This document shows positions 5,859 through 51,559 of a stretch of DNA of 64,000 nucleotides, one piece after another. The translations under genes were made by a program, and so were the position numbers. Positions within the stretch are counted from its first letter, which is position 1. Every line of letters starts with the position of its first letter. The notes beneath the pieces were generated by a model that saw only the letters and a list, made by a program, of their open reading frames with translations, did not search any database and was not told the DNA's origin. The stretch is taken from IMG/VR virus record IMGVR_UViG_3300042319_002138, positions 62,001 through 126,000 of that record; one strand, 5' to 3'.

Positions 5859-5862
5859 AGTT

Positions 5863-27211: not shown

Positions 27212-27700
27212 ATGGCAGATTTGTTAATGAGAATGCCTGTTCCTTACGAACCAAAGAAAAAGAATAGGTTTATATTTAGATTCCCTACACCATTGGGTAT
27301 CCAAGAATGGTTTGTATCAACAGGTGCTAGACCGACTTATACAGCAGAAGAAACTGAGATTCAATTCTTAAATACTTCTACTTTTGTAATTGGTAGATTT
27401 ACTTGGGAAACAATCGATGTTACTTTCCGTGACCCAATCGGTCCTTCAGCTACTCAAGCACTTATGGAGTGGGTTCGCCTTCACTCTGAATCTGTTACAG
27501 GTAGACAAGGTTACGCAGCTGGTTACAAGAAAGATGTAGAGTTGGAGTTGTTAGACCCAACAGGAGTTGTTATCGAAAAGTGGATTCTACAAGGTACAAT
27601 GATTACTTCAGCTAACTTTGGTGATTTGGATTACTCTTCATCAGATATCGCTGATATCTCTGTTACTTTAAGATTTGACAGAGCAATTAGTGTATTCTGA
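27212..27700 (+). CDS. Tail tube protein (gp19-like)
   Basis: YEPKKKNRF, WETIDVTFRDPI, YKKDVELELLDPTGVVIEKW, FGDLDY. Confidence 0.9.
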   Translation: MADLLMRMPVPYEPKKKNRFIFRFPTPLGIQEWFVSTGARPTYTAEETEIQFLNTSTFVIGRFTWETIDVTFRDPIGPSATQALMEWVRLHSESVTGRQGYAAGYKKDVELELLDPTGVVIEKWILQGTMITSANFGDLDYSSSDIADISVTLRFDRAISVF

Positions 27701-28231: not shown

Positions 28232-28264
28232 AAAAAAAAAGACCCTTTTGGGTCCCTTTTTTTT
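28232..28264 (-). terminator. Intrinsic terminator after the peptidase gene
   Basis: GACCC-TTTT-GGGTC flanked by A and T runs. Confidence 0.6.
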
Positions 28265-29457: not shown

Positions 29458-30219
29458 ATGTCAAATCAAGAAAACGAATTTAATTTTGATGCTCCATTCG
29501 ATGTACTAGAGTTACCATCAAAAGGATTATTGTACCCAGGTAGACCATCTACGGTTAGGGTAGAATATCTTACTGCTTCCGATGAGAATATTTTAACTTC
29601 ACCAAACTTAATTAAAAGTGGTAAAGTTTTAGATATTCTTCTACAAAAGAAAATTAAAAGTACAGAAATCTCTTTAGACCAAATGTTAGTTGGTGATAGA
29701 AACTCCATTATGATTTGGTTAAGAGCCACAGGATATGGTGAAATGTATCCAGTTAAAATGATGGACCCTGAAACAGGTGATGAATTTGAAACAGAAATTG
29801 ATTTGTCTGCTTTAGGTACAAAAGAATTAACTGCTGAACCAGATGAAAATGGTGAGTTTGACTTTTTCTTACCTAGAAGTAAAAAGAAAATTAAATTTAA
29901 ATTGTTAACTGTTTCTGATGAATCTTCTATCAGTAAAAAAACAGACCAAAGAAACAAAGCAACAAAATCTTTAATTAGTAACGCTTTAACATATAGATTA
30001 CAGGCACAAATTAAAGAAATTGACGGTAACAGAGACCCTGCTTTCCTTGCTAAGTTTATTGAAGTTATGCCAGCTTTTGATTCTCTAAAGTTTAGAGAAT
30101 ATTCAGACGAAATTGAGCCAGGAATAGAACTGGAGGTGGACGTGGAGGGACCATCTGGTCCATTTCGTAGTCCCTTTAACATTGGACTCAACTTTTTTTG
30201 GCCTAACGCTAGAGTATAG
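29458..30219 (+). CDS. Baseplate hub assembly / tail assembly chaperone (T4 gp26-like)
   Basis: LPSKGLLY, LTASDENIL, GDRNSIMIWLRATGYG, C-terminal FFWP; lies between tube and tape measure. Confidence 0.7.
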   Translation: MSNQENEFNFDAPFDVLELPSKGLLYPGRPSTVRVEYLTASDENILTSPNLIKSGKVLDILLQKKIKSTEISLDQMLVGDRNSIMIWLRATGYGEMYPVKMMDPETGDEFETEIDLSALGTKELTAEPDENGEFDFFLPRSKKKIKFKLLTVSDESSISKKTDQRNKATKSLISNALTYRLQAQIKEIDGNRDPAFLAKFIEVMPAFDSLKFREYSDEIEPGIELEVDVEGPSGPFRSPFNIGLNFFWPNARV

Positions 30220-38100: not shown

Positions 38101-39496
38101 TACTTTAATTGGTGCGGCACAACCACCAATAACAGAGCAAACAGAACAAACAGTAGTTACTGTTAGAGATGTTGAAACCACAATACCCGCTAGTAAAGAA
38201 AAAATAGAAAGACAACGTGAAGCTGAATTAGCTGCAGCGTTAGCAGCGAAAGCTTCTAGATACATGGCTTGGGAATGTTCTTATTTTGAAAAAATGAAAC
38301 AAGATGATTCATTTATTTATGAAACATTAACACAGAAATTAAAATATTTCCACCCAGCATTTCACTCAATGACACCTGAAGGTTTTAATGCTAGATTAAC
38401 ATTCTTAAAACAATGTACAAGACAAGGACCTAACATTGCTGTAGGTGAACCTAGTAATTTAGCATTTGGTAAACCACCTGTTTGTGTTTTAAGAATTGGT
38501 GATTTTTATCATACCAAAATTATTATAGATTCAGTTAATTTAACTTTTGACCCATTACAATGGGATTTAAATCCTGAAGGTATTGGTGTACAACCAATGT
38601 TATGTAAAGCTGATTTAAGTTTTAAATTTATTGGTGGTTCTTCACTAGGTGGACCTATATCACAATTACAAAATGCAGTAGGATTTAACTTCTTTGCTAA
38701 TACGGCCTTATATAACCCAAGAGTAATTTCTAAATCGGTTGGTAAATATGTAACAAAAAGGGTTGACCCACTTACAGGACAAGAAACTGAATTTACAGTA
38801 CAAACACCTGCAGGAGCTAATGGTTCTATTGAATACGGTGCTTTCATGACACCTAGACAATCAACATCAACAAGTTTATCTAATAATGACTCTAATGGGT
38901 CTACATCAAATTCTAGTACAGATACGGTACCAAATGATAAAGCAAAAGCTACAGCTGATGCACAACAAGCGGACCAACAAGTAGCTGGTAAAGAGGCACA
39001 ATCAACAGTTGCTGAACAAACTAAAGTTGACCAAGAGTTCACTAAAAAAGAAGAAGAAATAGCTGATAGCTCAACAGCAGAAAATGATGGTGTGAAAGGA
39101 AATACATTCCCTGGATTTGATAAAAAGACTGGTGTATATACAATGCAATATACACAAATATTAACATGGAAAAAAGGTGGTGGAACAAATGCCGCACCTG
39201 CCGGTGTTAATAAGTTAAAGGTAGAAAAAGGACAAAAAGTTTATTTACAAACTACCACAAACGGAAAAGAAATTTTTATTGGTGGTTCATTTAAAAACCC
39301 TGATAATAATAAAGTATATAGTACAATAAACAACCCTCTTAGGGTATACTGTAACGGGGATAACGGTTTCAATTTCTTCTTTGTAGAATCATCTGGAAAT
39401 AGTGGTTTTTATACAAACACAGGATTCTATAATGTGGTAAAAAAAGTATTCTGTAAAGGTACTGTACCTAAAACATGGGCTGAATTAACAGCATAA
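35123..39496 (+). CDS. Large baseplate / tube-initiator-like protein with an inserted OmpA-like domain
   Basis: WFPPYDISF…FIGRGEPVYTYNNTERSGTLSF and PPVCVLRIGDF…QPML segments; IKIIGKTS…NEKLAQKRANSTKDYL…RNR is OmpA-like. Confidence 0.6.
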   Translation: MPNAINPNDYNIDFFATDFIGVTTAESFRDYLFSKNLPDLPPELINGAAGNFSSDYAEKGLEKSINYTSISNPGDIDEWLVEGNFSTSLHEVRDINLLSGNNYGPPTIEAYNEPGLIPENTGFLQYPTSSGGDDLKSILLSDQLAGLGPGAAINFPSDLNDIAKDRRKEEAINRLKLKAQDNILGKLNLDPFGLLAGEDLILRDYKITTRPTVLGKVFEFFSDAADVTIPNSPIPSGAFGSYGDLDNPVSYSDLMDSTGSGTKTLIYNAVARNKYGPTLSEPKGFLANTFGAGQAAQKNNYLSPASTTLGQALGIPLIDKINQAVGKAVDALNGGVNNGVGIEGNTPPTETENPSITLDNIQENAQAEFDTLWNGQNIDTWQTQGPITKIEIPGIGLSLTIPDNGPDGPIGTKIPMNVGDEFYPGEINGSKNSGISYDRGMYWGSHTNNPFKKGILKYTQDLINNSRNTKDYKDKARFVGATNDASNFDAKSGRHNNYSMGNTVTDAENNFYCRSWSVRNPYRKVSDLIRHGGGVDSSGNTRSLTREDLNLSVLDNNGFVKIAPYVGDFKSRSFSTDGSENNLESGVLKLGNPQIQKYMLSIENLAWQNSEHILHVAPCEVGPNGGRIMWFPPYDISFTDNSSANWEATSFIGRGEPVYTYNNTERSGTLSFTLIIDHSMAMTEIKQKGEEALFRYFAGCENPIEAFTSIVPKAVEDETKVQQVTETTTTKTDVTKDNPEVCDPEPPPVTKLQFYFRNARRFELDSVGTNLTTELGSNADEKPPNYLSQYTKLWPNGYLRGSSGTPPPTIPNPNNPGQFIPNPAFTSSTQTDIETLNQQALDNLNTLVDFLLTPDGKRYKIKIIGKTSDAGPTSGGKSNEKLAQKRANSTKDYLLNTLYAVETAVGVVKAENLGSQKTYPTEKEWRDSNLRWEVLAVGETDSSLSVSYDDGTGQKTEQKDDNRTFGDSQTSVPQAIRNRTTLVTLEYNKEIDDTLIGAAQPPITEQTEQTVVTVRDVETTIPASKEKIERQREAELAAALAAKASRYMAWECSYFEKMKQDDSFIYETLTQKLKYFHPAFHSMTPEGFNARLTFLKQCTRQGPNIAVGEPSNLAFGKPPVCVLRIGDFYHTKIIIDSVNLTFDPLQWDLNPEGIGVQPMLCKADLSFKFIGGSSLGGPISQLQNAVGFNFFANTALYNPRVISKSVGKYVTKRVDPLTGQETEFTVQTPAGANGSIEYGAFMTPRQSTSTSLSNNDSNGSTSNSSTDTVPNDKAKATADAQQADQQVAGKEAQSTVAEQTKVDQEFTKKEEEIADSSTAENDGVKGNTFPGFDKKTGVYTMQYTQILTWKKGGGTNAAPAGVNKLKVEKGQKVYLQTTTNGKEIFIGGSFKNPDNNKVYSTINNPLRVYCNGDNGFNFFFVESSGNSGFYTNTGFYNVVKKVFCKGTVPKTWAELTA

Positions 39497-39507: not shown

Positions 39508-39822
39508 ATGGCAATATACTACGATAGATATAGAGATTTCAGGAAAGACGGTATGGTAACAACCTTACCGTTTATAAAAATACCTGTAAAACCATCAGAC
39601 AAAAGAATTGTTACGGATAATAAAACAAGATTTGATAAAATAAGTCAAACTTATTATGGGAATCCCTTCCATGGTTGGTTGATATTACAAGCTAATCCAG
39701 AATTCGGTGGTTTAGAGTTTGACATTCCTGAAAATACAGTTATAATAGTACCATTTCCTTTAAACAAATCATTAGAGGAATACCAATCTCAAGTAGAGAG
39801 ATATAAAAGATTATACGGATAA
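39508..39822 (+). CDS. LysM-like baseplate protein (gp53 / P2 gpX-like)
   Basis: RFDKISQTYYGNPFHGWLILQANP…IIVP. Confidence 0.75.
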   Translation: MAIYYDRYRDFRKDGMVTTLPFIKIPVKPSDKRIVTDNKTRFDKISQTYYGNPFHGWLILQANPEFGGLEFDIPENTVIIVPFPLNKSLEEYQSQVERYKRLYG

Positions 39823-39836: not shown

Positions 39837-42800
39837 ATGGCACTTAATCAAGGACCACAACCAAAAGTTCAAGATATGGGTAACGGAATTAGATACGTTG
39901 ACCCAAACCCAACAGATGAAATAGTTAATCACGAAGACTTGGTGATGTATGTAAAACTAGTTGCTAGGTCTAAAGGTAGAAGTATCTTAACATTTGATGA
40001 CGCTAATGACCAAGTTACTAATATTGTAGAACAAAGAAATGTAAAATCAGAAACTAACTTCACATACCCAACAGGTAAAGATAGTATTGATACTAGTTGG
40101 ACTAACATTGGGGGTGGTAACTTAAACTTTGGTGAAGATTTAGGTTCATTTGGTATCACAAATATTAATATAGAATTTAAATCTAGTTTCATGCCACAAA
40201 TTGTAATTGATTTTGTGGATGTTCGTGGAGCAGCTTTATTTGAACAAGGACCCTGTTCACCTTACGCAGTCTTTTTTCACTTACCTTACCCTGTTTTTGA
40301 ATTAACAGTAAAAGGATATTATGGTAGACCAGTTACATACACATTAGCTTTAACTAAATTTAATACAAAATTTAATTCGGACACAGGTAACTTTGAATCG
40401 AAAGCAGAATTTGTGGGTTATACTTATGCATTCTTAGCGGATATCCCTATGGGATATGTTATGGCAGCTGGATTTATGGAAAAACCACATAATGGTAAAG
40501 ATATTTTGGCTGAAAAATGGAAATTATTAATGGATAAAAAAGTTTTGGTTAATAATGTAGAAACACCATTAATAGACCAAACGTCATTCACTGATGCTAC
40601 AAAACCTATAAACGTTTATGATTTAATTAAATCCTCTAAAAAACTAGAATCAAGAACAAGTGAATTAAAAAATTCTACACAAGTAACCAATTTAGGTAAA
40701 ATTAATAAAACCAAAAATGAGTTAAAGGGGTTACGAGAATCAGTTTTAGAATTTAGACAAAAATTTTTAGAAAAAATAGCTAATTCCCCCAATGGTGGGT
40801 ATAGAATTAGTCCCAATACTACAAACCAAAAAAACACATTATATTTAAAATTACCCAACGTTAGTGCATCAGATGATAATCCAGTATTAGTTGAACTTAA
40901 AAAAGTAGTTGAAACTTATTTTGGTACAGGGGAAAACTCTCAATTAGGTGGTACTATAGGTGCAAAATATAATTCCGTAAATAGTTATTACACAAATAAT
41001 GCTATTGATGGACCACCAATACTTTCTTGGGATACAATTAAAACTAATGCTTCTGGATTTTTCGGTACACCAATAAATATAGTTGATGGTTTAAGAGATT
41101 ATTATATTGATATATATGAAAGTTTATTAAAACCTATTGATGTTGCTAGTGTAGAACTTAATAAAAAATATATAATTGAAAAAGATAATACTAAAAATTT
41201 CTTAAACAAAGAAGTTGTGACCACGTTAGGTTTTTTACCTACAATTAGTAATGTTTTTGCTATAATTCTAACAAACGTTGAGGTATTTCTAGAATTACTA
41301 TTAAGAACTTCTCGTGACGCAGAAAAATATCACCAAGAAAATAATGTGAATATTGGCCTAGATAAAACTGGGCTCCAACAAATTTTAGATTTAAAAGGTA
41401 CCCAAAATAATGGTGCTGAATTATCTGATGAAGAGAACGATAAACAAAAAAACAAAGTATATCCTTGGCCAACATATTATGAAAAGAAACAAGGTTCTGA
41501 TAGTGAAGTTGGGGATAAAGAAACATACCCAGGGGAAAATCCCGAATTTGTTAGTTGGCCTGAAGTAATATTTGTTGAATCGTTTATTAAAGCTTTAACA
41601 AAATTAAAAGGTGAATTAGCTGTTTTAGAATTACAATTAGAAAATTTACCTGGTTATGATAATTTTGCCCCAATCACACCCTACGAAACTCACGCATTTG
41701 GTGTAGTAGAATCACCAAATAGATGGTTAAAAATACAAAACGGTAGTAGTGACCAAGCTTCTTGGGCTGATTCAATCTATAAAGTAATGGGTGAAAATGC
41801 TTTTATTATTGGTGACTACACTATGATTAATAGTTTAAGTGTTTGGAAATCACAATTAGGTTTTAAAAATGGTTGGGGTGTAGAAACATTAACTAATGGT
41901 AATGGGGCTAGTAATGGATATTCTAACACTGGTAATAAGTATTCTATTAAACCACAAAGATTAGCAGAAAACCCAAAAGTATTACAAAATATTGCTGCAA
42001 ATAACCAATTAGGTAGATATGGTGGTGAAGGATTTACCTACGGTTCACAAGGGAAAGATACAGATTCTTTTAAAAGAAAAATAGTTCCCGCTACCACAAA
42101 AAGAATGAAAGATTGGGGTTATGTTGATGCTTTAAATTTGATGACAACCCTTAAATTAGATGGCGGGGTAAATACGACCCTAGAATGGTTACAAAATGAT
42201 ATTACAACAGCAAAGAAAGATTTTATTATAACAGAAATAAAAAGAGTTTTAACCAATAAACTTAAAACACAAAAATTTGATGAGTGGAAAGTTTCGGCTA
42301 CCGCGGCTATTGGTGGTACACCAGCTCTTGTAGATAAACAATCACAAATATGGAATAGCTATTTCCAATACGTTACAGCTAAAAATGTATTAACACTAAC
42401 AGGCCCAATTTATTTAAATGATAGGGTTGATAGTGCTAAAGATATAAAAATATCAGCAAACCCACATAATAATGACGGAAGTGGAGCTGTTTTAGTAAAA
42501 GACACTGATTTAACAGCAAGAGAAATAGATTTTAGTAGTGATTCATTAATAGAAGAAATTAAAAATGGTTATAAAAAATATTATGCTAGTACTGAAGAAA
42601 CTGATAGTGGTATAGCCGAAAATCTTTTAGAAGTTGGTTCTTTAGCGTATAGATTATTAAAATTCAGGCCAAAAACACCTAGGGACAAACCAACTACCGC
42701 TTATGATACAAAAAAAGTGATAGAGACAGAGGCTGACATAAATTTAAGTAGAGATAAAAATACAAATATGCTTACTTTAGGTGATTATTTTGCACCTAAT

Positions 42801-45014
42801 TTTTATCATACATATGAAAACCTAAAAGACCTACCACAAGAGGGACCAATATTAGATTTAAGTTCATCGAGAACAATTTATGACAGTTATTCTCCAAAAT
42901 ATATATTTTGGTCTAATTTTATGGGTGCCTCAAATACTAATACTTCTGTTGGTTCCGCGGATTCAATAATAAACACACCACTATGGTTACTTAATTATCC
43001 TTTATGGAAAAATTCTTGGCAATACGCTGAGTCTGGTGGTGATAACGGTACCGTGGCTCTTGATGAAGTAGTTTCAATAGTGGCTGGTAAAACTTCTGGT
43101 GAATTTGCTACTTACCTTGGAGAAGATATTGGTACATACCCATCTTACCATAATAAAGCTGATTCAAACCAAAGAAGAAATTGGTCTACTTGGTGGGGAT
43201 TAAATCAGTGGGGTGTAGATAATACTAATAATATATACAAACCATTGGCTTATATGGCGGTAATGTCATTTGGTTTTGATAATTTAAAATCTGAATTTAG
43301 AACAGGACATTTTCCACCTTGGGATGGCAATAGTGATACAGATTTATCATCATTTTCTAATTTCACAACTTCAGCTATTATGGCATATCCACCTAAAGCT
43401 TATATATTATTAATTGGAGCCATTTTATGGAGAATGAAAGAAACTAATTTATTATTATGGGACGAAATAAAACCTACAAAAGACCCTTTTCCTTATGACG
43501 CTAGTATAAATTCAGGGTGGAATAGATTAAATAAATCATACCTTTCTGACAATTCAAATATAGGTATAGATGACATAAACGACCCTGTATGGTTTTTCCA
43601 TACATCTACGTCTAGACCTTGGTTTAAAGGTGGTTCTGTATACGCAATAAAACCAGAACAAAATGCTTTATCTTTTGGTGGTACAAATTCTAGTTATCAA
43701 AGAAGATGGTTAGGTGCCCAAGGGGGTGTAGATAGATGGACCAATGGTGGAGCATCCATAAGTAAAAATTTTGGAACTCAAAAACCAGTAATTATCGGAC
43801 CTAATAACAGTATTAATTTTCCTCCTGGTTTATCTGCTTCTGATTTTAACTTTACAAATTCATTATATCGAGCCGGATGGACTAAATCAAGTTCTATTTT
43901 TGGTAAAAATGATGATAAAGTCCCTAGTAATGGTATATTTAGAAGTGCTGTAGGTAATATTACCAAAGGATGGTTTGACCAATGTAGACCCGACCAAATG
44001 CCTTTTATTTTAAGTGATAGTGGTAGAGGTATTGATTTTACAAGTCCTAAAACATTGGTTATTACTAATCTAAGTACTGAAACAAATAAGAATATCAATT
44101 ACAGTGATAAGACACCTAATTTATTAAATAATAAATACCCTATTTTAAAAGAAGAATGTAAAGAATTAATGTTTATACCAAAAAGTTTAAAAATACAATT
44201 TATTGATGCTTTTGAATCTTGGGCAACAGGTGAAAATGCTAGATGGTTATTAGGCTTAGACCCATTAAATTGGAATGATAATGGTAGTTTAGATAATTGG
44301 TCAACAACAAGTGGTGGTTTTGATAATTCATATGTTTTAAATGGGTATAAAGGATTTTTAACTCAGACTGTTAGAAAAGATAGACAGTATTTAACATACA
44401 CCAAAGAAGATAAGAAAAATTACTATACACAACGTTTTACTTTTCTTGATGAGGGTGAATTATCTGGCACAAAACCAAAACCAAAAAAACAAAAGAAAAG
44501 TAATAGTAATACTGATTACGAACCAGCATCACCTACTTATGATGTTTCATGTTTTGTGGCTGGTTCTAAAATTAAGTTAAGTAGTGGTAAAAATATTAAT
44601 ATTGAAGATTTAGTAGTTGGTGATATTGTATTAAGTTATAATGTAAATACAAATATTTTTGAAGAAAGTAGTATTGAAAACGTTACAATAAATTATAAAG
44701 ATAATCTTGTAATTTACAATTTTGATAACGGAATTAAAATAACTTGTACCGATACCCACCCTATTTGGGTTGTTGGTAAAGGTTGGTCTTCTTATAGACA
44801 AACTGATGTAAATGATTCTGAACATATAGGACCCACAAAACAAATTAGTAGTGGTGATGAATGTTTTTATTATTCTAACAATAAATTTAATAAAGTTAAA
44901 ATTTCTAAAATAATTGAAAAACAAAATAAAATGGTTAGGGTTTGGAACGTTAAAAACGTTACTGGTAACCATAACTTCATCATAAATAATGTTTTAGTAC
45001 ATAACGTTACATAA
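39837..45014 (+). CDS. Giant baseplate hub-like protein (N-terminal part) ending in a Hint domain
   Basis: Follows the LysM gene; FGITNINIEF…FVDVRG…PYPVFELTVKGYYG hub-like N-terminus; C-terminal Hint. Confidence 0.7.
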   Translation: MALNQGPQPKVQDMGNGIRYVDPNPTDEIVNHEDLVMYVKLVARSKGRSILTFDDANDQVTNIVEQRNVKSETNFTYPTGKDSIDTSWTNIGGGNLNFGEDLGSFGITNINIEFKSSFMPQIVIDFVDVRGAALFEQGPCSPYAVFFHLPYPVFELTVKGYYGRPVTYTLALTKFNTKFNSDTGNFESKAEFVGYTYAFLADIPMGYVMAAGFMEKPHNGKDILAEKWKLLMDKKVLVNNVETPLIDQTSFTDATKPINVYDLIKSSKKLESRTSELKNSTQVTNLGKINKTKNELKGLRESVLEFRQKFLEKIANSPNGGYRISPNTTNQKNTLYLKLPNVSASDDNPVLVELKKVVETYFGTGENSQLGGTIGAKYNSVNSYYTNNAIDGPPILSWDTIKTNASGFFGTPINIVDGLRDYYIDIYESLLKPIDVASVELNKKYIIEKDNTKNFLNKEVVTTLGFLPTISNVFAIILTNVEVFLELLLRTSRDAEKYHQENNVNIGLDKTGLQQILDLKGTQNNGAELSDEENDKQKNKVYPWPTYYEKKQGSDSEVGDKETYPGENPEFVSWPEVIFVESFIKALTKLKGELAVLELQLENLPGYDNFAPITPYETHAFGVVESPNRWLKIQNGSSDQASWADSIYKVMGENAFIIGDYTMINSLSVWKSQLGFKNGWGVETLTNGNGASNGYSNTGNKYSIKPQRLAENPKVLQNIAANNQLGRYGGEGFTYGSQGKDTDSFKRKIVPATTKRMKDWGYVDALNLMTTLKLDGGVNTTLEWLQNDITTAKKDFIITEIKRVLTNKLKTQKFDEWKVSATAAIGGTPALVDKQSQIWNSYFQYVTAKNVLTLTGPIYLNDRVDSAKDIKISANPHNNDGSGAVLVKDTDLTAREIDFSSDSLIEEIKNGYKKYYASTEETDSGIAENLLEVGSLAYRLLKFRPKTPRDKPTTAYDTKKVIETEADINLSRDKNTNMLTLGDYFAPNFYHTYENLKDLPQEGPILDLSSSRTIYDSYSPKYIFWSNFMGASNTNTSVGSADSIINTPLWLLNYPLWKNSWQYAESGGDNGTVALDEVVSIVAGKTSGEFATYLGEDIGTYPSYHNKADSNQRRNWSTWWGLNQWGVDNTNNIYKPLAYMAVMSFGFDNLKSEFRTGHFPPWDGNSDTDLSSFSNFTTSAIMAYPPKAYILLIGAILWRMKETNLLLWDEIKPTKDPFPYDASINSGWNRLNKSYLSDNSNIGIDDINDPVWFFHTSTSRPWFKGGSVYAIKPEQNALSFGGTNSSYQRRWLGAQGGVDRWTNGGASISKNFGTQKPVIIGPNNSINFPPGLSASDFNFTNSLYRAGWTKSSSIFGKNDDKVPSNGIFRSAVGNITKGWFDQCRPDQMPFILSDSGRGIDFTSPKTLVITNLSTETNKNINYSDKTPNLLNNKYPILKEECKELMFIPKSLKIQFIDAFESWATGENARWLLGLDPLNWNDNGSLDNWSTTSGGFDNSYVLNGYKGFLTQTVRKDRQYLTYTKEDKKNYYTQRFTFLDEGELSGTKPKPKKQKKSNSNTDYEPASPTYDVSCFVAGSKIKLSSGKNINIEDLVVGDIVLSYNVNTNIFEESSIENVTINYKDNLVIYNFDNGIKITCTDTHPIWVVGKGWSSYRQTDVNDSEHIGPTKQISSGDECFYYSNNKFNKVKISKIIEKQNKMVRVWNVKNVTGNHNFIINNVLVHNVT
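44550..45005 (+). other. Intein-like Hint domain (residues 1572-1723), no endonuclease, followed only by Val-Thr-stop
   Basis: Block A CFVAGSKI, IEDLVVGDIVLS, block B ITCTDTHPIWV, blocks F/G VWNVKNVTGNHNFIINNVLVHN. Confidence 0.92.
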
Positions 45015-46942
45015 TGAGTGATAACACAAGATTAGTAGGATTAAAAAAAGATAAAAACAAAGAACTGTATGAAGAATTATTTGTAACTGATTCTAAATAC
45101 CGTTTAATTTCTTCATCACCTAAAGTTTTTTCTGCCATACATCCTGATGATTTTAATGAAGAATTTTATATATCTGAGGATGAATTAAGTTCATACGTCG
45201 ACGGATTTATTCAAGCGGTGTCAGACAATTCCAAAAAAATTATTGAGTCAATTACACAAAATACGGATAATAACGATAATATAGCTGATTCCGCTTTAAA
45301 TGACACAGACCTAAAACTTTCTTTATATCGTTCATTTAAATCACTTTACGATAAATGGATTTCTTGTTCTGTAATTGGTTCAGATAGTACTTCGGGTAAT
45401 ACTTCAGGTTATTTCTATAATAACTATGGTAGTAGTAGTCCATCTGAAACAAGGATGTTATATGAACATTTTAGTTTTGTTAATAGAGGTAATGGTGATG
45501 TGGGTAAAAAAGCAGTTATAGATTTTTCATACCTTTCTAATTTAGCTAGTACCAAAAACGGACAAGGGCCAACACAATCCCTATACGAATCTATAACTAA
45601 TTTATTAACAAAAAACAATTTTGAATTTTTTGCAATGCCAAACGTAATTGGGTATTCTACAGGGGGCAATGAAGTTCTTGAAAATATTTTTAGAGCTTTC
45701 GATAGTCCTATAGATAGAATACCCGCTAAACCTGGATTTGTGTGTATGTTTATTGGGGGTAATTCTAGGACATTAGATATACCAAAAACTTCATGTAGTA
45801 ATAATGGTATTAATTTTGATTATGTAGACGATACCTTTGATATAGATAAACCCACTACATACCCAGAAGATTTTATTAAAAATGGTGGTATAACAGCTTT
45901 TAAAGTTAGATACGGACAACAAACCCAAAATCATTTTAAATCTTTAGAACTAGACCAATCCGAATTTAAAGAAACTCAAGAATCACTTTTGGTAATTGAT
46001 GCCTTAACAAATCCTAGTAGTGGCTCAGACCCAACACAAATTGGTAAGGGTAATAATATTTATGATATGTATTTGACAAGAAACTATTCTTGTACTGTTA
46101 ACACATTTGGTAACATGCAAATACAACCAATGATGGTCTTTAAATTAGAGAACGTCCCAATGTATAAAGGAACTTATTTAATTACAAACGTCAGTCATTC
46201 CATAAAACCACACAATGTAGAAACAACATTTAAAGGTGTGAGACAACCAATAGTCACCGTACCTATTGTAACAGAAGCTTTGAGTTTGATTGACCTAGCT
46301 CTAGCTGAAACACTACAAGGAGATGCTGCTTTAGGTAACACTGGTGGGGGAGGTGGAGGAACCACAACTACAACTACAATATTACCAGCCAACCAAATAT
46401 TCATAGACGATACTGTTTATGGAGATAGTTCAAATGAACAATGCCCTAAAATAGACGGTATAACAGATGGTGGTGTTGGTGACGCTTATACCGGTGGTAA
46501 ATTATTTAAAATTAGGTTATGTAAGGTAAAAGGTGCACTTATAAACGTCAAAATGGCGGAAAATTTAAATAATATGGTTAATGCCGCACAAGCGGATGGT
46601 GTACCATTAACTTGTGGTAGTAACTTTAGAACAATGGAAGACCAAATAAATACGGCTAAAGCTAATGGGTGTTATAAAACAGGTGTTTATGTAAAAGGTA
46701 ATTGTGACCCTGATACTGCCACACCAGGGAGGTCAAGACACCAAAGTGGATTTGCAATAGATTTTGGTTGTAATGGGTCGACAATTTGTTATAAACACGA
46801 TTCAGCTTGGTGTGCCGCAAATGGTGCTTCTAAAAAACCAAACGAATATGTTTGTTTTAATTGGTTGGTTAATAACGCCTCAAAATACGGATTTATTAAT
46901 TACAACGGTGAGGCTTGGCACTGGTCAATAGATGGTACATAA
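45014..46942 (+). CDS. Hub C-terminal cassette 1: shared core plus M15 (VanY-like) peptidase tip
   Basis: TAATG overlap with the Hint gene; core GNMQIQP…GTYLITNVSHSI…TTFKGVR; tip FRTMEDQ, PGRSRHQSGFAIDF, EAWHW. Confidence 0.8.
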   Translation: MSDNTRLVGLKKDKNKELYEELFVTDSKYRLISSSPKVFSAIHPDDFNEEFYISEDELSSYVDGFIQAVSDNSKKIIESITQNTDNNDNIADSALNDTDLKLSLYRSFKSLYDKWISCSVIGSDSTSGNTSGYFYNNYGSSSPSETRMLYEHFSFVNRGNGDVGKKAVIDFSYLSNLASTKNGQGPTQSLYESITNLLTKNNFEFFAMPNVIGYSTGGNEVLENIFRAFDSPIDRIPAKPGFVCMFIGGNSRTLDIPKTSCSNNGINFDYVDDTFDIDKPTTYPEDFIKNGGITAFKVRYGQQTQNHFKSLELDQSEFKETQESLLVIDALTNPSSGSDPTQIGKGNNIYDMYLTRNYSCTVNTFGNMQIQPMMVFKLENVPMYKGTYLITNVSHSIKPHNVETTFKGVRQPIVTVPIVTEALSLIDLALAETLQGDAALGNTGGGGGGTTTTTTILPANQIFIDDTVYGDSSNEQCPKIDGITDGGVGDAYTGGKLFKIRLCKVKGALINVKMAENLNNMVNAAQADGVPLTCGSNFRTMEDQINTAKANGCYKTGVYVKGNCDPDTATPGRSRHQSGFAIDFGCNGSTICYKHDSAWCAANGASKKPNEYVCFNWLVNNASKYGFINYNGEAWHWSIDGT

Positions 46943-46996
46943 AATATTATGGGTGATAAAAAAAATTAATAGGATTAAAAAAATAAGATAAAAATA

Positions 46997-48982
46997 ATGA
47001 GTGATAACACAAGATTAGTAGGATTAAAAAAAGATAAAAATGATGAACTGTACAAAGAATTATTTGTAACTGATTCTAAATACCGTTTAATTTCTTCATC
47101 ACCTAAAGTTTTTAGTGCAATTCACCCTGAAGATTTTGGAGAAGATTTTTATATTTCAGAGGATGAACTAGGTTCTTATATTGATGGATTTATTCAAGCG
47201 GTGACCGATAACTCTCAAAAAATCATTGATTCCATCACACAAAATACAGATAATAACGATAATATAGCTGATTCTGCTTTAAATGACACAGACCTAAAAC
47301 TTTCTTTATATCGCTCATTTAAATCTCTTTACGATAAATGGATTTCTAGTTCAGAATATAACCAACAACAAACATCTAATTATTTTTATAATGCATATTC
47401 AGCAGAAAAAACTGACGAAAGAATGTTATACGAACATTTTAATTTTGTTAATAGATGTGGTACTGACATAGGTAAAAAGGCTGTTATAGATTTTGCTTAC
47501 CTTTCTAATTTAGCTAGTACCAAAAATGGGCAAGGACCTACACAATCACTATACGAATCTATAACTGGAGTTTTAAGTAAAAATAATTTTAATTTCTTAC
47601 CATTACCTGGGTATATTAAATATTCAGACGCAAATACAAGTGAATTAGAAGATATGTTTAGAGCTTTTGATGGTCCACTAACTAAAATGAGAGCAAACCC
47701 TAAATTTGTGTGTATGTTTATTGGTGGTAGTTCTAGAAGTTTAGATATACCTAGGTCTTATTGTGGTACTAACGGAACTAATTTTGAATATAAAGATGAT
47801 TCTTTTGACATATTTGACCCAACCACTTACCCCCAAGATTTTAATAACGATAAAACAAGTGGTATTGTGGCTTTTAAAGTTAGATACGGACAAGAAACCC
47901 AAAACCACTTTATTAAAGTGGAGTTAGACCAAGCTGAGTTTAGGGAAACACAAGATTCACTTTTGGTAATTGACGCTTTGGTAAACCCAAGTAGTGGTTC
48001 GGACCCAACACAAATTGGTAAGGGTAATAATTTATATGATGTTAACTTAACTAGAGGTTACACTTGTAAGGTTGAGACTTTGGGTAACATGCAAATACAA
48101 CCCACAATGTTTTTTAAATTAGAAAATATCCCAATGTTTAGAGGTACTTATCTAATTACAGATGTATCACACACAATCGTACCACATAACGCTAAAACAA
48201 CTTTTACAGCAACAAGACAACCAATAATTACGGTACCAATTGTGACCGAAGCTTTGAGTATATTAGATTTATCTTTAGTTGAAACAGTACAAGGAGACAC
48301 GAATTTAAATAACACTGGAGGTGGAGGAACCACAACAACCACAACAACTGATAATAATTATGACGAATCTACAGTAACAACATTCAGTGGAATTGATGAT
48401 TGTGTAACAACTTCTTTAAATAGTGTTAAAAATGATGGGTCCTTCCCAGTAATCATAAAAGGATGTTATACGGCTAAAGATTTAGGTGGAGACGCCTTAC
48501 ACTCTTTTAATACTAGAAAAAGTGATAATTTTGGTGGTTATATGTTTACTGAATCAGCAGTACCAGCTAATTTTAGTAATAGAGTTAAAGTTGGTACACA
48601 GGGTGGAGTTTATGCTGGAAAAGGTGTTAACACTGTAATAAAAGAAATAAATAGTAAGGGTGTTAAAGTAAAAGTTTCAAAAATAGAAATTAATATAGAT
48701 TGGACTAATTATTTTGTTAGTTGGGCAGTTACAATAGAAAAAAGTACTGACGAAAAATCTTACATTGGAGTAGCTACTAGAGGTTCAATAGGTAGTATAT
48801 CTTCTGGAAACTATTCAGACAGAGCAGATTCACAAATACCGACATTAAAAAGCCAAAACCCAGAATACGCAAATTGGGTTTCACCAAAAATTATTTATAA
48901 TAAAAATATAATGGCAACTGGTTATTTAGAAGACCCTAAAAAACAATTAAGACAATATTTTTTAGCTTATACAAAAGCTTAA
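46997..48982 (+). CDS. Hub C-terminal cassette 2: shared core plus unknown tip domain
   Basis: Same MSDNTRLVGLKKDKN start and ~435-aa core; GGGGTTTTTT linker; unrecognised ~200-aa tip (DALHSF…). Confidence 0.75.
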   Translation: MSDNTRLVGLKKDKNDELYKELFVTDSKYRLISSSPKVFSAIHPEDFGEDFYISEDELGSYIDGFIQAVTDNSQKIIDSITQNTDNNDNIADSALNDTDLKLSLYRSFKSLYDKWISSSEYNQQQTSNYFYNAYSAEKTDERMLYEHFNFVNRCGTDIGKKAVIDFAYLSNLASTKNGQGPTQSLYESITGVLSKNNFNFLPLPGYIKYSDANTSELEDMFRAFDGPLTKMRANPKFVCMFIGGSSRSLDIPRSYCGTNGTNFEYKDDSFDIFDPTTYPQDFNNDKTSGIVAFKVRYGQETQNHFIKVELDQAEFRETQDSLLVIDALVNPSSGSDPTQIGKGNNLYDVNLTRGYTCKVETLGNMQIQPTMFFKLENIPMFRGTYLITDVSHTIVPHNAKTTFTATRQPIITVPIVTEALSILDLSLVETVQGDTNLNNTGGGGTTTTTTTDNNYDESTVTTFSGIDDCVTTSLNSVKNDGSFPVIIKGCYTAKDLGGDALHSFNTRKSDNFGGYMFTESAVPANFSNRVKVGTQGGVYAGKGVNTVIKEINSKGVKVKVSKIEINIDWTNYFVSWAVTIEKSTDEKSYIGVATRGSIGSISSGNYSDRADSQIPTLKSQNPEYANWVSPKIIYNKNIMATGYLEDPKKQLRQYFLAYTKA

Positions 48983-49021
48983 TTATACTATCTGTTTTAG
49001 TTAAAAAAATAATAAAGTAAT

Positions 49022-51559
49022 ATGAGTGATAACACAAGATTAGTAGGATTAAAAAAAGATAAAAACAAAGAACTGTATGAAGAATTATTTGTAACTGATT
49101 CTAAATATAGGCTCATATCTTCTTCACCTAAAGTTTTTTCTGCTATTCACCCCGAAGATTTTGGTGAAGATTTTTATATATCTGAGGATGAATTAAGTTC
49201 TTATGTTGATGGGTTTATTCAAGCGGTGACAGACAATTCCAAAAAAATTATTGAATCAATTACACAAAATACAAATAATAACTCTATTGAGGATAACATG
49301 TCAAGTGACCCAGATGTTAAACTTTCATTATATCGTTCATTTAAATCATTTTATGATAAATGGGTATCTAATTCTTATGATAGTGTAAATAAATCTTCTG
49401 GTTATTTCTTTAATAATTACGGTGAAGAAGATGATAGAATGTTATATGAACATTTTAAATTTATTAATAGAGCAAATCAAGACGTGGGTAAAAAAGCAGT
49501 TATAGACTTTTCATACCTTTCTAATTTAGCTAGTACCAAAAACGGACAAGGGCCAACACAATCACTATATGAGTCATTGACAAGTTTATTAAGTAAAAAC
49601 AATTTTGATTTTTGGCCATTACCAGCAAACATTGATTTATCAACAGTATCATTAACAAATGAACAAGTAAAAGATATTTTTAGACCATTAACATTTATAG
49701 ATAAGGTACATCCAGGACCATCATTTGTTTGTGTTCATATTGGGGGTAGTTCTAGGTCTCTAGCTGATTTAAAAGACAATAGTAATACTTGTAGTGTTAA
49801 TGGTGGTAATTTTGAATATGTTGATGACTCTTTTGATATTACAAATACAGTAGATTTACCGGTTGAATACACTAAAGAAGGTGAGGGTTTAGTTGTTTTT
49901 AAAGTTAGATATGGGCAAGAAGCACAAAATCATTTTAACTCAATAGAGTTAGACCAAACAGAATTTAAAGAAACACAAGAATCTTTACAAATAATAGATG
50001 CCTTAACAAATCCTAATAGTGGCTCAAACCCATCACAAATTGGTAAAGGTAATAACATGTATGATGTTTATTTAACAAGGGCTTATAATTGTACGGTTTC
50101 AGGTTTGGGTAATATGTCAATACAACCTTTAATGTATTTTAAATTAGAAAACGTACCAATGTTTAGAGGTACTTATCTAATTAATGCCGTTAGCCATACA
50201 ATAACAAATAATAAAATTACTACTGAATTTACTGGTATGAGACAACCCAAAGTAACCGTACCTGTTGTAACTGAAGCTTTGAGTTTAATTGATTTAGCTT
50301 TAGTTGAAGTAGTACAAACTGATACAACTACCACTAATACTAATGGTAATGGAAGTACTACTGATAGTGGTGATTATAGTGGTGGTGATATTTCAGTATT
50401 TAATAGTGTTGATACAAACGCTAAAGGTTGTGAGATTATAGGAAGACTTAAGGGTGATTTGGGTATAACTGATGCACAGGCCGCTGGTATTATTGGTAAT
50501 TTAATTGCTGAATCAGGTTTAATACCTGATAGAATACAAGATAGAAAAGGGAGAAAACCAAGGGGACTTATAACAGAATCTGGTGGATGGAATGGAACTA
50601 CATTTTCTAAAGGTGGGGAAGATGAAGAAGGTTATGGTTGGGCACAATGGACTTTCTATACATTAAAAAATGATTTTATAGAATATGCAAGTACTAAAGG
50701 TTTTGATTTAAAAACAAAACCAGCAACAGATGAAATTAATTATGGTTATTTAATATATTGGTTAACTGTATCAGAAGGTGGTAAAAAATTTGAAAAATTT
50801 AAAAGTGAAGATACAGTTTATAAAGCAGCAAAATATGTTGCTCAAAAATGGGAAAGATGTGAATTTTGTCAAACAGAGGCTGAATGGAAAAAAAGAAGTG
50901 CTTTTGCACAAAACGTGTTTGATAGTTGTGGTAAAACACCAACTGGTGGGGGTGGTACAGGAAAACCACCAGAACCAAAAAATTGTAGTAGTTCTGTTAA
51001 ATTTGGTCTTAATGGTGGTGGTACTTTAGCTAACGCTAAAAACGCTATTGTTGGTTCTTCAAGTGTTGGGACCCTTAATGGTATGAGTAAATCTAGTACT
51101 TACGGTAACTTAACTAGTAATAATATATACGTATACTATAACTGTGGTGGTAAAACACTCTCTTGGTTAAAACAACAAATTAATGGAGACGGTAATGTTT
51201 ACACAAGTGTAGAATCATTCTTCCAAGTAGGTATTGGTACTAATGACGGGTATCCAACAAAGGATAGTACCAAGAAAGATATTAAAGCATATACTGATTT
51301 GGTTAGAAAAAAATTCCCTAACGCTACATTATATATTTTACCTGGTACTCGTGGTTGGGGAAGTGTTTCTAATACTACACTTAGTCAAATGAAATCTTAT
51401 TATAAACAATATACAGATTTAGGTTGGACTTTATTGTGGCCTTTAAATAGTTCTAGTAATGAAATAGACCCTTATTTTGACACACAAACAAAAGCTCACA
51501 ACAGTAATGATGAATGGTTTAAAAAACAAATGAAAAGAATCAAAGATAATAAGAGTTAA
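49022..51559 (+). CDS. Hub C-terminal cassette 3: shared core plus phage-tail lysozyme and SGNH-like domain
   Basis: AQAAGIIGNLIAESGL…GYGWAQWT (phage tail lysozyme-like); VGSSS, GGKT, GIGTNDG and a late His (SGNH-like). Confidence 0.75.
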   Translation: MSDNTRLVGLKKDKNKELYEELFVTDSKYRLISSSPKVFSAIHPEDFGEDFYISEDELSSYVDGFIQAVTDNSKKIIESITQNTNNNSIEDNMSSDPDVKLSLYRSFKSFYDKWVSNSYDSVNKSSGYFFNNYGEEDDRMLYEHFKFINRANQDVGKKAVIDFSYLSNLASTKNGQGPTQSLYESLTSLLSKNNFDFWPLPANIDLSTVSLTNEQVKDIFRPLTFIDKVHPGPSFVCVHIGGSSRSLADLKDNSNTCSVNGGNFEYVDDSFDITNTVDLPVEYTKEGEGLVVFKVRYGQEAQNHFNSIELDQTEFKETQESLQIIDALTNPNSGSNPSQIGKGNNMYDVYLTRAYNCTVSGLGNMSIQPLMYFKLENVPMFRGTYLINAVSHTITNNKITTEFTGMRQPKVTVPVVTEALSLIDLALVEVVQTDTTTTNTNGNGSTTDSGDYSGGDISVFNSVDTNAKGCEIIGRLKGDLGITDAQAAGIIGNLIAESGLIPDRIQDRKGRKPRGLITESGGWNGTTFSKGGEDEEGYGWAQWTFYTLKNDFIEYASTKGFDLKTKPATDEINYGYLIYWLTVSEGGKKFEKFKSEDTVYKAAKYVAQKWERCEFCQTEAEWKKRSAFAQNVFDSCGKTPTGGGGTGKPPEPKNCSSSVKFGLNGGGTLANAKNAIVGSSSVGTLNGMSKSSTYGNLTSNNIYVYYNCGGKTLSWLKQQINGDGNVYTSVESFFQVGIGTNDGYPTKDSTKKDIKAYTDLVRKKFPNATLYILPGTRGWGSVSNTTLSQMKSYYKQYTDLGWTLLWPLNSSSNEIDPYFDTQTKAHNSNDEWFKKQMKRIKDNKS

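What the first reader, a model, noticed from the sequence alone, without database searches (positions are those of the whole stretch)
45014..51559. Three-way polymorphic tail-tip arsenal, possibly a heterotrimeric hub
Seen: three tandem paralogs share a ~435-aa core ending VTEALS(L/I)(I/L)DL, then a Gly/Thr-rich linker, then unrelated tips: an M15 Zn peptidase (H-x6-D, ExxH), an unknown domain, and a lysozyme plus SGNH-like domain. Established: gp27/gp5 and VgrG hubs are trimers, and evolved VgrGs carry variable C-terminal effectors. Inference: three cassettes could fill the three positions of one trimer, giving peptide, glycan and ester cleavage together, or produce virion subpopulations with different host range.
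Basis: partly seen in the sequence, partly recalled or inferred. Interest (0 to 1): 0.8.

Follow-up and report, generated by a model that had tools for sequence, protein, structure and literature searches.

The report
Split tail-tip protein with swappable lysins
An uncultured lake-water phage has split one giant tail-tip protein in two: a shared "body" gene that ends in a self-cleaving intein-like domain, and three tandem copies of the end piece, each carrying a different cell-wall-cutting tip.

Summary
Three tandem + strand ORFs (45014-46942, 46997-48982, 49022-51559) share a ~435-aa core, a Gly/Thr linker and unrelated tips. The tips are a VanY/M15 peptidase, an unknown domain, and a Phage_lysozyme2 domain plus a weakly SGNH-like domain.

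- **Fold:** the core does resemble gp27/gpD/VgrG hubs, but only weakly. All named Foldseek hits are hub or spike proteins, yet TM-scores are 0.1-0.3 and there is no Pfam match.
the core is not a free-standing hub. In most of ~2,100 related protein clusters it is the C-terminal part of one giant 1,500-3,650-aa protein. That protein's N-terminal part is homologous to the upstream 1,725-aa ORF (39837-45014).
- **Fission:** this clade split the gene and multiplied the C-terminal module. Relatives carry one to three cassettes, and tips within a genome are never alike.
- **Hint domain:** in most split genomes the body ends in a Hint domain. It keeps its N-terminal Cys/Ser nucleophile but has no C-extein.
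- **Selection:** all three cassettes are under purifying selection.

The variable cassette number argues against an obligate 1:1:1 heterotrimer. Mixed loading of shared docking sites is more likely. Expression and virion content could not be tested.

The parts
39508..39822 (+). 104-aa small baseplate protein (gp25-like sheath-initiator/wedge type). It always sits immediately upstream of the body or giant gene.
   Evidence: phrog_7145 'baseplate wedge subunit', E 4e-4. Its positional counterpart in Flavobacterium phage immuto (101 aa) hits the same PHROG at 1e-10 and aligns to it at E 2e-5. It is conserved next to the giant gene in most of the related loci examined.
39837..45014 (+). 'Body' ORF of 1,725 aa. 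It is the N-terminal part of the ancestral giant tail-tip protein. Its stop codon overlaps the ATG of cassette A (TAATG).
   Evidence: Residues ~8-690 are homologous to the N-termini of single giant ORFs (1,315-2,650 aa) that carry the core near their C-terminus in loci L016-L039. Synteny is identical. No Pfam or PHROG family matches outside the Hint domain.
44259..44273 (+). DPLNW motif (body residues 1475-1479), a landmark of the old body-core junction.
   Evidence: The same (I/L)DP(L/I/V)N(F/W) motif lies ~30-45 aa upstream of the core in the fused giants. In the split bodies it lies 35-110 aa before the end or before the Hint domain.
44550..45005 (+). Hint (intein-like) domain, body residues C1572-N1723. 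Only Val-Thr-stop follows it.
   Evidence: Pfam AXH 36.9 bits, Intein_splicing 28.7, Hint 24.2. CFVAGSKI (Cys1), TDTHP (block B) and VLVHN can be read directly. Alignment A6 of 7 homologues shows Cys/Ser at position 1 in 7/7, an invariant His-Pro, a terminal Asn in only 2/7, and no C-extein.
45014..46942 (+). Cassette A: core (45014-46318), Gly/Thr linker, VanY/M15 peptidase tip (46541-46924).
   Evidence: dN/dS against sister strain L049 is 0.07.
46997..48982 (+). Cassette B: core (46997-48292), Gly/Thr linker, 206-aa tip of unknown fold (48362-48979).
   Evidence: The tip has one homologue only (P0002, 98.5% identical). The Atlas lead to ConA-like/Laminin_G_3 scores 0.84, below the tool's own reliability line. 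dN/dS is 0.06.
49022..51559 (+). Cassette C: core (49022-50317), linker, Phage_lysozyme2 domain (50441-50923), possible SGNH-like esterase domain (50957-51556).
   Evidence: Core dN/dS is 0.05. Between strains the lysozyme domain is replaced (49% aa identity) while the flanks stay ~97% identical.

Best explanation
The three ORFs are alternative C-terminal modules of one giant tail-tip (baseplate-centre) protein that has undergone gene fission.

In most relatives a single 1,500-3,650-aa chain reads [body]-[~440-aa core with a hub-like domain]-[linker]-[one or two cell-wall hydrolase domains]. In this clade the gene was cut just after a conserved DPLN(F/W) motif. The N-terminal body (39837-45014) became its own gene. 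The core-plus-tip module acquired its own start codon and was multiplied to two or three tandem copies. Each copy kept the conserved core and carries a different tip.

Inferred mechanism. The cassettes are probably co-transcribed with the body. Each docks on a body subunit through its conserved N-terminal ~120 residues and hub-like domain, recreating non-covalently what used to be one chain. The virion tail tip, or the virion population, then displays a mixture of a peptide-cleaving enzyme, a glycan-cleaving enzyme (possibly with an esterase) and an unknown module, which open the peptidoglycan during tail penetration.

The Hint domain at the end of the body most likely forms a (thio)ester at its first residue and cuts itself off. 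That would expose the body's native C-terminus where a cassette docks.

Shown: paralogy, tip identities for A and C, the fission, synteny, Hint residue conservation, purifying selection, tip non-redundancy. Inferred: virion location, docking, mixed loading, Hint self-cleavage.
For: Fission. A profile search found 2,103 representative clusters. Apart from the close stand-alone cassettes and some shorter proteins, the listed hits are 1,200-3,650 aa long with the core at ~1,100-2,700. IMG/VR giants carry the core near the C-terminus and an N-terminus homologous to the window's 1,725-aa ORF, in identical synteny. The split clade is monophyletic (97/99) and nested among fused forms.

Shared junction. 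The DPLN(F/W) motif lies upstream of the core in the giants and near the end of the split bodies.

Tips. They include VanY, Phage_lysozyme2, GH24, Amidase_2, Peptidase_M74 and GH19-like. All identifiable ones are peptidoglycan hydrolases. Cassettes of one genome never share a tip in 11 of 11 genomes. The fused sister L018 has a VanY-like and a tip-C-like domain in one chain, and P0093 has VanY plus Phage_lysozyme2.

All three maintained. The sister strain keeps all three. Core dN/dS is 0.02-0.07 and tips A and B are 0.08-0.16.

Conserved docking end. The first ~30 codons are 83-93% identical even at third positions among A, B and C, and paralogues group by genome. Both point to gene conversion or homogenisation of the common part.

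Tail context. Sheath, tube, hub-subunit and gp25-like genes lie upstream. A separate GH24 endolysin-like gene lies elsewhere (8439-9476). A positional analogue exists in the cultured Flavobacterium phage immuto: a 101-aa gp25-like protein followed by a 938-aa VanY-bearing protein.

Hub-like fold..

Hint..
Against: No direct evidence exists that any of these proteins is in the virion or is expressed, since no RNA run was listed. The core model is only moderate (pLDDT 70, pTM 0.60), and the fold matches have low TM-scores. The body has no recognisable family, so its place in the baseplate is inferred from gene order alone. Three split genomes (L013, L042, L044) lack the Hint domain, so its role cannot be essential to the split design. 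Tip B has no predicted activity. Grouping of paralogues by genome could reflect independent duplications rather than gene conversion.
Confidence: 0.6

Rival explanations
1. The core is a gp27/VgrG-type hub, and the three paralogues each fill one position of a single obligate 1:1:1 heterotrimer, so every virion carries all three tips.
For: Hub-like fold hits. Three cassettes here, in sister strain L049, and in L002 and L043. Tips are complementary. VgrG heterotrimers are documented in type VI secretion (10.1101/2022.04.29.490089).
Against: Seven related genomes have two cassettes, and one has one intact plus one broken copy. Fused relatives have a single chain. The core alone is only part of the ancestral protein. 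The cores are 55-74% identical with no paralogue-specific interface evident, and they are homogenised by recombination. That pattern suits interchangeable subunits rather than position-specific ones.
Confidence: 0.12
2. Population-level diversification. Each virion is loaded mostly with one cassette type, or with a random mix, giving subpopulations that suit hosts with different cell-wall chemistries (bet-hedging).
For: The cores look interchangeable. Cassette number varies. Tips turn over quickly, including replacement of the lysozyme domain of cassette C between strains whose flanks are ~97% identical. Many tip types occur across the clade.
Against: Nothing distinguishes this from mixed loading within each virion. 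No terminator-like site lies on the + strand between the cassettes, and promoter-like sites are at chance level. That suggests co-expression rather than a choice between cassettes.
Confidence: 0.18
3. Hint-mediated covalent re-joining. The (thio)ester formed at Hint residue 1 is attacked by the free N-terminus of a cassette, so the body is ligated to one of three alternative C-terminal modules. This would be a natural form of expressed-protein ligation.
For: The Hint domain sits exactly where the ancestral peptide bond between body and core used to be. Only its N-terminal chemistry is conserved: Cys/Ser1 in 7/7 and an invariant His-Pro, against a terminal Asn in 2/7 and no C-extein. Two divergent Hint types occupy the same site in phages whose bodies are 72% identical, so a Hint at this site appears to be selected or repeatedly acquired.
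Against: Three split genomes have no Hint domain. Cassette N-termini have no conserved Cys/Ser/Thr after Met; the second residue is S, A, G, T, V or P. Hint domains in polymorphic toxins sit between the conserved and variable parts (MafB, PMC4436062), and are generally thought to release the variable part rather than ligate it (my own knowledge). No experiment supports ligation.
Confidence: 0.07
4. The cassettes are redundant or decaying duplicates, or soluble lysis enzymes unrelated to the tail, and only one of them matters.
For: One relative (L044) has a broken second cassette. Tip B has no recognisable activity.
Against: All three are intact and under strong purifying selection. They are conserved in the tail module across the clade. 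The core is covalently part of a giant structural-module protein in relatives. A separate endolysin-like gene exists.
Confidence: 0.03

Closest known systems
Tail-associated lysins built on a gp27-like hub domain (Tal of lactococcal siphophages TP901-1/Tuc2009; T4 gp27-gp5; phi29 gp13)
   Same: A tail-tip protein with a hub-like domain is followed by a flexible linker and a C-terminal peptidoglycan hydrolase, and it is encoded in the baseplate module. From my own knowledge: Tal trimers can hold two forms (full-length and truncated) in one virion. Background on Tal is in PMC11409707 (listed).
   Different: Here the hub-like core is the C-terminal part of a much larger protein that has been split. 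The module is present in 2-3 genomic copies with different enzymes. The sequence matches no Tal, gp27 or gpD profile.
Evolved VgrG proteins of type VI secretion, which form heterotrimers
   Same: Several paralogues share a gp27-like core and carry different C-terminal effector domains, including cell-wall hydrolases. Mixed trimers are documented.
   Different: Those belong to a bacterial secretion system, their genes are scattered, and there is no split body or Hint arrangement. The fold match to VgrG is weak (4mtk_A, E 1e-3, TM 0.22).
Polymorphic toxin loci (Rhs, CdiA, MafB) with bacterial intein-like/Hint domains and downstream alternative cassettes
   Same: A conserved N-terminal part, a Hint domain at the boundary, and variable C-terminal enzymatic modules arranged in tandem. 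[quoted passage not shown]
   Different: The cassettes here are complete genes with a 435-aa conserved core. No immunity genes lie between them (the spacers are 54 and 39 nt). The targets are peptidoglycan bonds during phage entry. The Hint domain is at the extreme C-terminus with nothing downstream.
Flavobacterium phage immuto gp033, a 938-aa 'carboxypeptidase' that follows a 101-aa gp25-like protein
   Same: Same position in a syntenic tail module: hub subunit, then large tail proteins, then a gp25-like protein, then a large VanY-bearing protein. Its sheath and hub-subunit proteins are among the closest cultured relatives of the window's.
   Different: It is a single unsplit gene with one tip. 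It has no significant sequence match to the core or body profiles, and the family is absent from 50,697 GenBank phage records at tblastn sensitivity.
Branched receptor-binding systems with a shared N-terminal anchor and different enzymatic tailspikes (for example CBA120 TSP1-4, PhiK64-1). Cited from my own knowledge, not checked here.
   Same: The design principle of one anchor with many enzymatic heads, encoded as tandem paralogues.
   Different: Those are peripheral tailspikes that degrade capsule or O-antigen. They are not central tail-tip lysins derived from a split giant protein.

Membership tests
gp27 / gpD / VgrG baseplate hub (Pfam Phage_GPD PF05954 and relatives) | Sequence match to a family profile | tested here: not met
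   No Pfam hit for A, B or C. None turned up for 60 family members even at E<=5. No PHROG hit to the core and no PDB sequence hit.
gp27 / gpD / VgrG baseplate hub (Pfam Phage_GPD PF05954 and relatives) | Hub fold (tube-like beta-barrel domains) | tested here: inconclusive
   The AF2 model has pLDDT 70.4 and pTM 0.60. Foldseek's named hits are almost all hubs or spikes: Pvc8 9qgm E 2.8e-4, VgrG1 4mtk 1e-3, 3d37 2.4e-3, the P1, Mu and pyocin hubs, T4 gp27, and BFVD 'Phage protein D' and 'baseplate hub' at ~1e-5. TM-scores are only 0.1-0.3. The Atlas leads agree.
gp27 / gpD / VgrG baseplate hub (Pfam Phage_GPD PF05954 and relatives) | Conserved C-terminal hairpin motif of gpD-type hubs | tested here: inconclusive
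   hhalign of a narrow P2 gpD profile (Neff 1.5) against A3 aligned gpD 326-371 to core 364-407 at 3% probability, pairwise E 0.014.
gp27 / gpD / VgrG baseplate hub (Pfam Phage_GPD PF05954 and relatives) | Trimer at the centre of the baseplate | not testable with these tools
   No multimer prediction or virion data were available.
Virion-associated peptidoglycan hydrolase (tail lysin) | Carries a peptidoglycan hydrolase domain | tested here: met
   A has VanY at 50.7 bits and C has Phage_lysozyme2 at 73.6 bits, both above their cut-offs. B has none.
Virion-associated peptidoglycan hydrolase (tail lysin) | Encoded in the tail/baseplate module, separate from the lysis endolysin | tested here: met
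   The endolysin-like GH24 gene lies at 8439-9476.
Virion-associated peptidoglycan hydrolase (tail lysin) | Physically present in the virion | not testable with these tools
   The phage is uncultured and no proteome exists.
LAS/M15 zinc peptidase (VanY) | Zinc ligands H-x6-D and a distal His; Pfam score above the gathering threshold | tested here: met
   HQSGFAID and EAWH can be read. PF02557 scores 50.7 against 25.
SGNH/GDSL hydrolase (second domain of tip C) | Blocks I (GDS), II (G), III (GxND) and V (DxxH); family profile match | tested here: inconclusive
   GSS, G and GTND are invariant in 10 homologues, and His181 is invariant, but no DxxH spacing is present. Lipase_GDSL_2 scores 14.7 bits against a cut-off of 32.9. 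No PDB hit.
Classical splicing intein | N-terminal Cys/Ser, block B TxxH, C-terminal (H)N, and a C-extein starting with Cys/Ser/Thr | tested here: not met
   Cys/Ser1 and His-Pro are conserved. The terminal Asn is present in only 2 of 7. Zero to a few residues follow the domain, so no C-extein exists.
Hint superfamily, N-terminal-cleaving type (Hedgehog-like or bacterial intein-like) | Hint fold or profile match with a conserved position-1 nucleophile and block B His, placed at the end of the cargo protein | tested here: met
   Pfam AXH (36.9 bits, above its 33-bit cut-off), Intein_splicing, Hint and Vint all cover residues 1570-1723. Homologues hit AXH, Intein_splicing or Vint. Residue conservation is in A6. 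Cleavage itself was not tested.
Polymorphic toxin system | Variable C-terminal toxin paired with an adjacent immunity gene | tested here: not met
   The spacers between cassettes are 54 and 39 nt with no ORF. The identifiable tips are peptidoglycan hydrolases.

The most novel reading that the evidence does not exclude
The Hint domain at the end of the body may not merely cut itself off. It may hand the body's C-terminus, as a (thio)ester, to the free N-terminus of any one of the tandem cassettes. That would re-create the ancestral peptide bond and give one structural protein three alternative, post-translationally ligated C-terminal heads. It would be a natural protein-ligation system that generates combinatorial virion proteins.
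Probability: 0.07. Interest if true: 0.95.

Novelty: new variant of a known kind. Interest (0 to 1): 0.62.

Why it matters
Tail-tip lysins fused to hub-like domains are well known. Three features appear to be undescribed: a large, entirely uncultured family of giant hub-lysin proteins (about 2,100 clusters); a clade that split the gene and multiplied only the enzyme-bearing end; and a Hint domain sitting exactly at the cut. My searches of the paper library for Hint or intein-like domains together with tail, baseplate or tape-measure terms found nothing comparable.

The locus offers a natural example of how a phage increases the enzymatic diversity of its penetration device without enlarging one polypeptide. 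It is also a clean case of gene fission followed by module duplication and tip swapping. And it provides a concrete, testable candidate for an unusual use of Hint chemistry in virion assembly.

The tips, including two unknown domains (tip B and the ~310-aa trans-encoded ORFs in relatives), are candidates for new cell-wall-active enzymes of aquatic bacteria.

Tried and rejected
- **GenBank phages.** Megablast of the locus and tblastn of the core, of the body N-terminus and of a distant core all found no match. The family is not in cultured or deposited phages at that sensitivity.
- **Family and structure libraries.** The core and body gave nothing in Pfam, PHROGs or PDB sequence searches.
- **Body versus core.** hhalign of the body N-terminus against the core was negative, so the two are not internal repeats.
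- **P2 gpD profile.** The listed homologues were all at least 77% identical, so the profile was too narrow (Neff 1.5) for a fair remote-homology test.
- **First AF2 model.** The model of whole cassette B was poor (pLDDT 49.5). I used it only as a lead and replaced it with a core-only model built on a 146-sequence alignment.
- **Programmed frameshift joining body and cassette A.** Rejected. The cassette frame has a stop at 45002-45004, there is no slippery heptamer, and relatives have gaps of a few to ~30 nt instead of an overlap.
- **Body as the tape measure protein.** Considered and set aside. In the syntenic Flavobacterium phage immuto an annotated tape measure lies upstream, and the window's 931-aa ORF weakly resembles it at E 0.005.
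- **Structural variants in metagenomes.** The 'joints' reported by read laying (47352>49439, 49583>45600) are cross-mapping of cassette A's own 5' part, which lay outside the stretch I laid, onto paralogues B and C. They are not evidence of rearrangement.
- **Expression.** No RNA run was listed.
- **Promoter and terminator scan.** At chance level.
- **Immuto gp033 as a family member.** Not significant against the core and body profiles. The motif resemblance I saw by eye is not claimed.
Full report
**1. The observation**

The window is a low-GC (~30%) phage genome fragment. It carries a contractile-tail module:
- sheath, 17597-20389;
- tube, 27212-27700;
- a hub-subunit-like gene, 29458-30219;
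- several large unknown proteins;
- a 104-aa gp25-like protein, 39508-39822.

Replication genes follow downstream: a gp32-like SSB and a UvsX-like recombinase.

Alignment A1 shows a ~435-aa shared core that ends VTEALS(L/I)(I/L)DL, then a Gly/Thr-rich linker, then unrelated tips.
- **Tip A** is a VanY/M15 peptidase above Pfam's threshold, with readable H-x6-D and ExxH motifs.
- **Tip C** starts with a Phage_lysozyme2 domain above threshold.
- **The last 200 aa of C** are SGNH-like only at motif level. GSS and GTND are invariant in ten homologues, and the Lipase_GDSL_2 hit is sub-threshold (14.7 bits).
- **Tip B** matches nothing. The ConA-like Atlas lead scores 0.84, below that tool's own reliability line.

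The locus is identical in several IMG/VR contigs of 163-226 kb. It is held by at least 24 lake-water metagenome runs. Relatives occur in TARA ocean assemblies and other JGI and ENA assemblies.

**2. What the core is**

A word-indexed search found 79 clusters with the same core. Their tips are swapped among VanY, Phage_lysozyme2, GH24 lysozyme, Amidase_2 and Peptidase_M74, plus unknowns, and a GH19-like tip turned up in one of them (P0054). Every recognisable tip cuts peptidoglycan.

An exhaustive profile search found 2,103 representative clusters. Apart from the close relatives, most hits are giant proteins of about 1,200-3,650 aa. In them the core sits at roughly residues 1,100-2,700, with 200-700 further residues after it. 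Some carry two enzymes in tandem, for example P0093 with VanY plus Phage_lysozyme2.

In IMG/VR loci L016-L039 the core lies inside single ORFs of 1,315-2,650 aa. The N-terminal several hundred residues of most of those ORFs are homologous to the window's upstream 1,725-aa ORF. Most of these loci show the same gene order as the window: 931-like, 1457-like, 104/106-aa, giant, 188-like, 134-like, 314-like, gp32.

A core tree places the stand-alone cassettes as one clade (97/99 support) nested among the fused forms.

The window's arrangement is therefore a gene fission of an ancestral [body]-[core]-[tip] protein. A conserved (I/L)DP(L/I/V)N(F/W) motif marks the junction. It lies 30-45 residues before the core in the giants and near the C-terminus of the split bodies.

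**3. Fold of the core**

A first AlphaFold model of whole cassette B was poor (pLDDT 49.5). A second model, core only, used a 146-sequence alignment that included the giants. It reached pLDDT 70.4 and pTM 0.60.

Foldseek against the PDB returned almost only central hub and spike proteins of contractile systems:
- PVC Pvc8;
- Pseudomonas VgrG1;
- the Neisseria Mu-like tail protein 3d37;
- the P1, Mu, pyocin R2 and diffocin hubs;
- T4 gp27.

Against BFVD, after two homologues, it returned 'baseplate hub subunit', 'COG3500 Phage protein D', 'late control protein D', 'YqbQ/XkdQ' and '43 kDa tail protein'.

Probabilities are high (0.97-1.0). E-values are modest (1e-5 to 1e-2) and TM-scores low (0.1-0.3). 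The Atlas gave the same leads: Phage_GPD, YQBQ and E217 gp41.

No sequence profile supports membership. hhalign against a narrow P2 gpD profile aligned only the most conserved core motif, residues 364-407, to gpD 326-371 at 3% probability.

I conclude that a gp27/gpD-like domain in the C-terminal half of the core is likely but not proven. The core as a whole is not a free-standing hub protein.

**4. The Hint domain**

The body ORF ends in a 152-residue Hint domain, C1572 to N1723 (nt 44550-45005). It hits Pfam AXH, Intein_splicing, Hint and Vint. It reads CFVAGSKI...TDTHP...VLVHN-VT-stop. The stop codon overlaps the ATG of cassette A (TAATG).

Homologous Hint domains end the body in L001, L002, L014, L043, L045, L046 and L049. 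Alignment A6 shows:
- Cys (6 of 7) or Ser (1 of 7) at position 1;
- an invariant His-Pro of block B;
- a terminal Asn in only two sequences;
- nothing, or only a few residues, downstream.

This is not a splicing intein. It is the N-terminal-cleaving kind of Hint, like the Hedgehog or bacterial intein-like arrangement.

Three split genomes lack the Hint domain altogether (L013, L042, L044). Two phages whose bodies are 72% identical (60-98% over most of their length) carry Hint regions only 19-38% identical (L001 and L046). The Hint module has therefore been exchanged or re-acquired at the same site.

None of the listed giants contains a Hint domain.

**5. Cassette number, tips and selection**

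Cassette counts:

| Cassettes | Genomes |
|---|---|
| 3 | window and sister strain L049, L002, L043 |
| 2 | L001, L013, L014, L042, L045, L046 |
| at least 2 | L011 |
| 1 intact + 1 broken | L044 |

In all eleven multi-cassette genomes the tips of one genome show no similarity to each other. The fused sister L018 has VanY-like and tip-C-like domains in one chain.

Paralogues group by genome in the tree. Identity among A, B and C is mosaic, with 83-93% third-position identity in the first 30 codons and again in codons 91-120 for A and B. This pattern fits gene conversion of the shared part.

Against sister strain L049 all three cassettes are intact. Core dN/dS is 0.02-0.07, and tips A and B are 0.08-0.16, though on few substitutions.

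In cassette C the lysozyme domain has been replaced between strains (49% identity). The core and the SGNH-like domain on either side are about 97% identical. Tip shuffling is therefore ongoing.

**6. Mechanism**

What is shown: paralogy, fission, synteny, the enzyme identity of tips A and C, Hint residue conservation, selection, and non-redundant tips.

What is inferred:
- The cassettes are co-expressed with the body. No terminator-like site lies between them on the + strand, although the scan is at chance level.
- Each cassette docks on a body subunit through the conserved N-terminal part, restoring the ancestral architecture without a covalent bond.
- The tail tip therefore carries a mixture of peptide-cleaving and glycan-cleaving (possibly ester-cleaving) activities, plus an unknown module, for local peptidoglycan digestion during penetration.
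- The Hint domain most likely removes itself to expose the docking end of the body.

Mixed loading within virions and virion subpopulations cannot be told apart here. The covalent-ligation idea is kept as a low-probability, high-interest alternative.

**7. Comparison with known systems**

The closest functional analogues are:
- hub-based tail-associated lysins (Tal, T4 gp27-gp5, phi29 gp13);
- evolved VgrGs that form heterotrimers;
- polymorphic toxin loci with a Hint domain at the boundary between conserved and variable parts.

A positional analogue exists in the cultured Flavobacterium phage immuto. There a 101-aa gp25-like protein is followed by a 938-aa VanY-bearing protein, and a separately annotated tape measure lies upstream. 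That protein does not match the family profiles significantly.

The family itself is absent from 50,697 GenBank phage records at tblastn sensitivity. The paper library holds nothing on Hint domains in phage tail or baseplate proteins.

**8. Verdict**

The three cassettes are the multiplied C-terminal module of a split giant tail-tip protein, and the other half of that protein is the upstream ORF, which ends in a Hint domain.

This is a new variant of a known kind (tail-tip lysins on a hub-like scaffold). It has one unusual feature, Hint at the fission point, that deserves an experiment.

Noticed in passing
window 7351-7446 (-): ARAGORN calls a 96-nt tRNA-Tyr (GTA) that lies entirely inside the 524-aa glycosyltransferase ORF 6825-8399 on the same strand. 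It is either a false call or an unusual overlap.
   Followed up: no
window 3244-8399 (-): A cluster of two family-2 glycosyltransferases (one with DUF5672) and an APS-kinase/HAD-phosphatase fusion (5863-6828). These are possible glycan or sulfation auxiliary genes in a phage.
   Followed up: no
window 35123-39496 (+): The 1,457-aa tail-module protein has an OmpA-like peptidoglycan-binding domain (residues 834-898, 29.6 bits). It is conserved upstream of the giant gene across the family.
   Followed up: partly
L013 7365-8306; L043 11104-12027; L041 1674-2471: Short cassettes (463-501 aa: core plus a ~40-50-aa tail, which in L013 and L043 ends ...DYNN) are followed by a conserved ~310-aa ORF of unknown function, 45-49% identical between loci. 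The tip may here be encoded as a separate gene, which would be a second fission.
   Followed up: partly
L044 11277-13045: A second cassette is broken into a 95-aa and a 479-aa ORF, whose core-HMM matches cover only positions 98-174 and 227-438. This is either decay or an assembly error. The body of this genome has no Hint domain.
   Followed up: partly
window 50441-50923 versus L049 (cassette C): Between two strains whose neighbouring genes differ by dS ~0.05, the Phage_lysozyme2 domain is only ~49% identical. The flanking core and C-terminal domain are ~97% identical. This points to a recent domain replacement.
   Followed up: yes
L001 versus L046, last ~200 residues of the body: Two divergent Hint types occupy the same site in phages with otherwise 72% identical bodies. 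Identity drops to 19-38% from the linker onward.
   Followed up: yes
window 50123-50169: All four lake runs show a depth spike and contig loose ends on both sides of this 47-nt stretch, which encodes the most conserved core motif. Co-occurring related phages probably share it.
   Followed up: no
window 28263-29279 (-): A 338-aa peptidase-like gene (phrog_4191, E 2e-44) sits on the opposite strand in the middle of the tail module, between the tube and hub-subunit genes.
   Followed up: no
L016 12312-14240; L018 12560-14086: In the fused-type sister phages an extra 642-aa or 508-aa ORF without a core follows the giant gene. Its relation to the tips was not examined.
   Followed up: no
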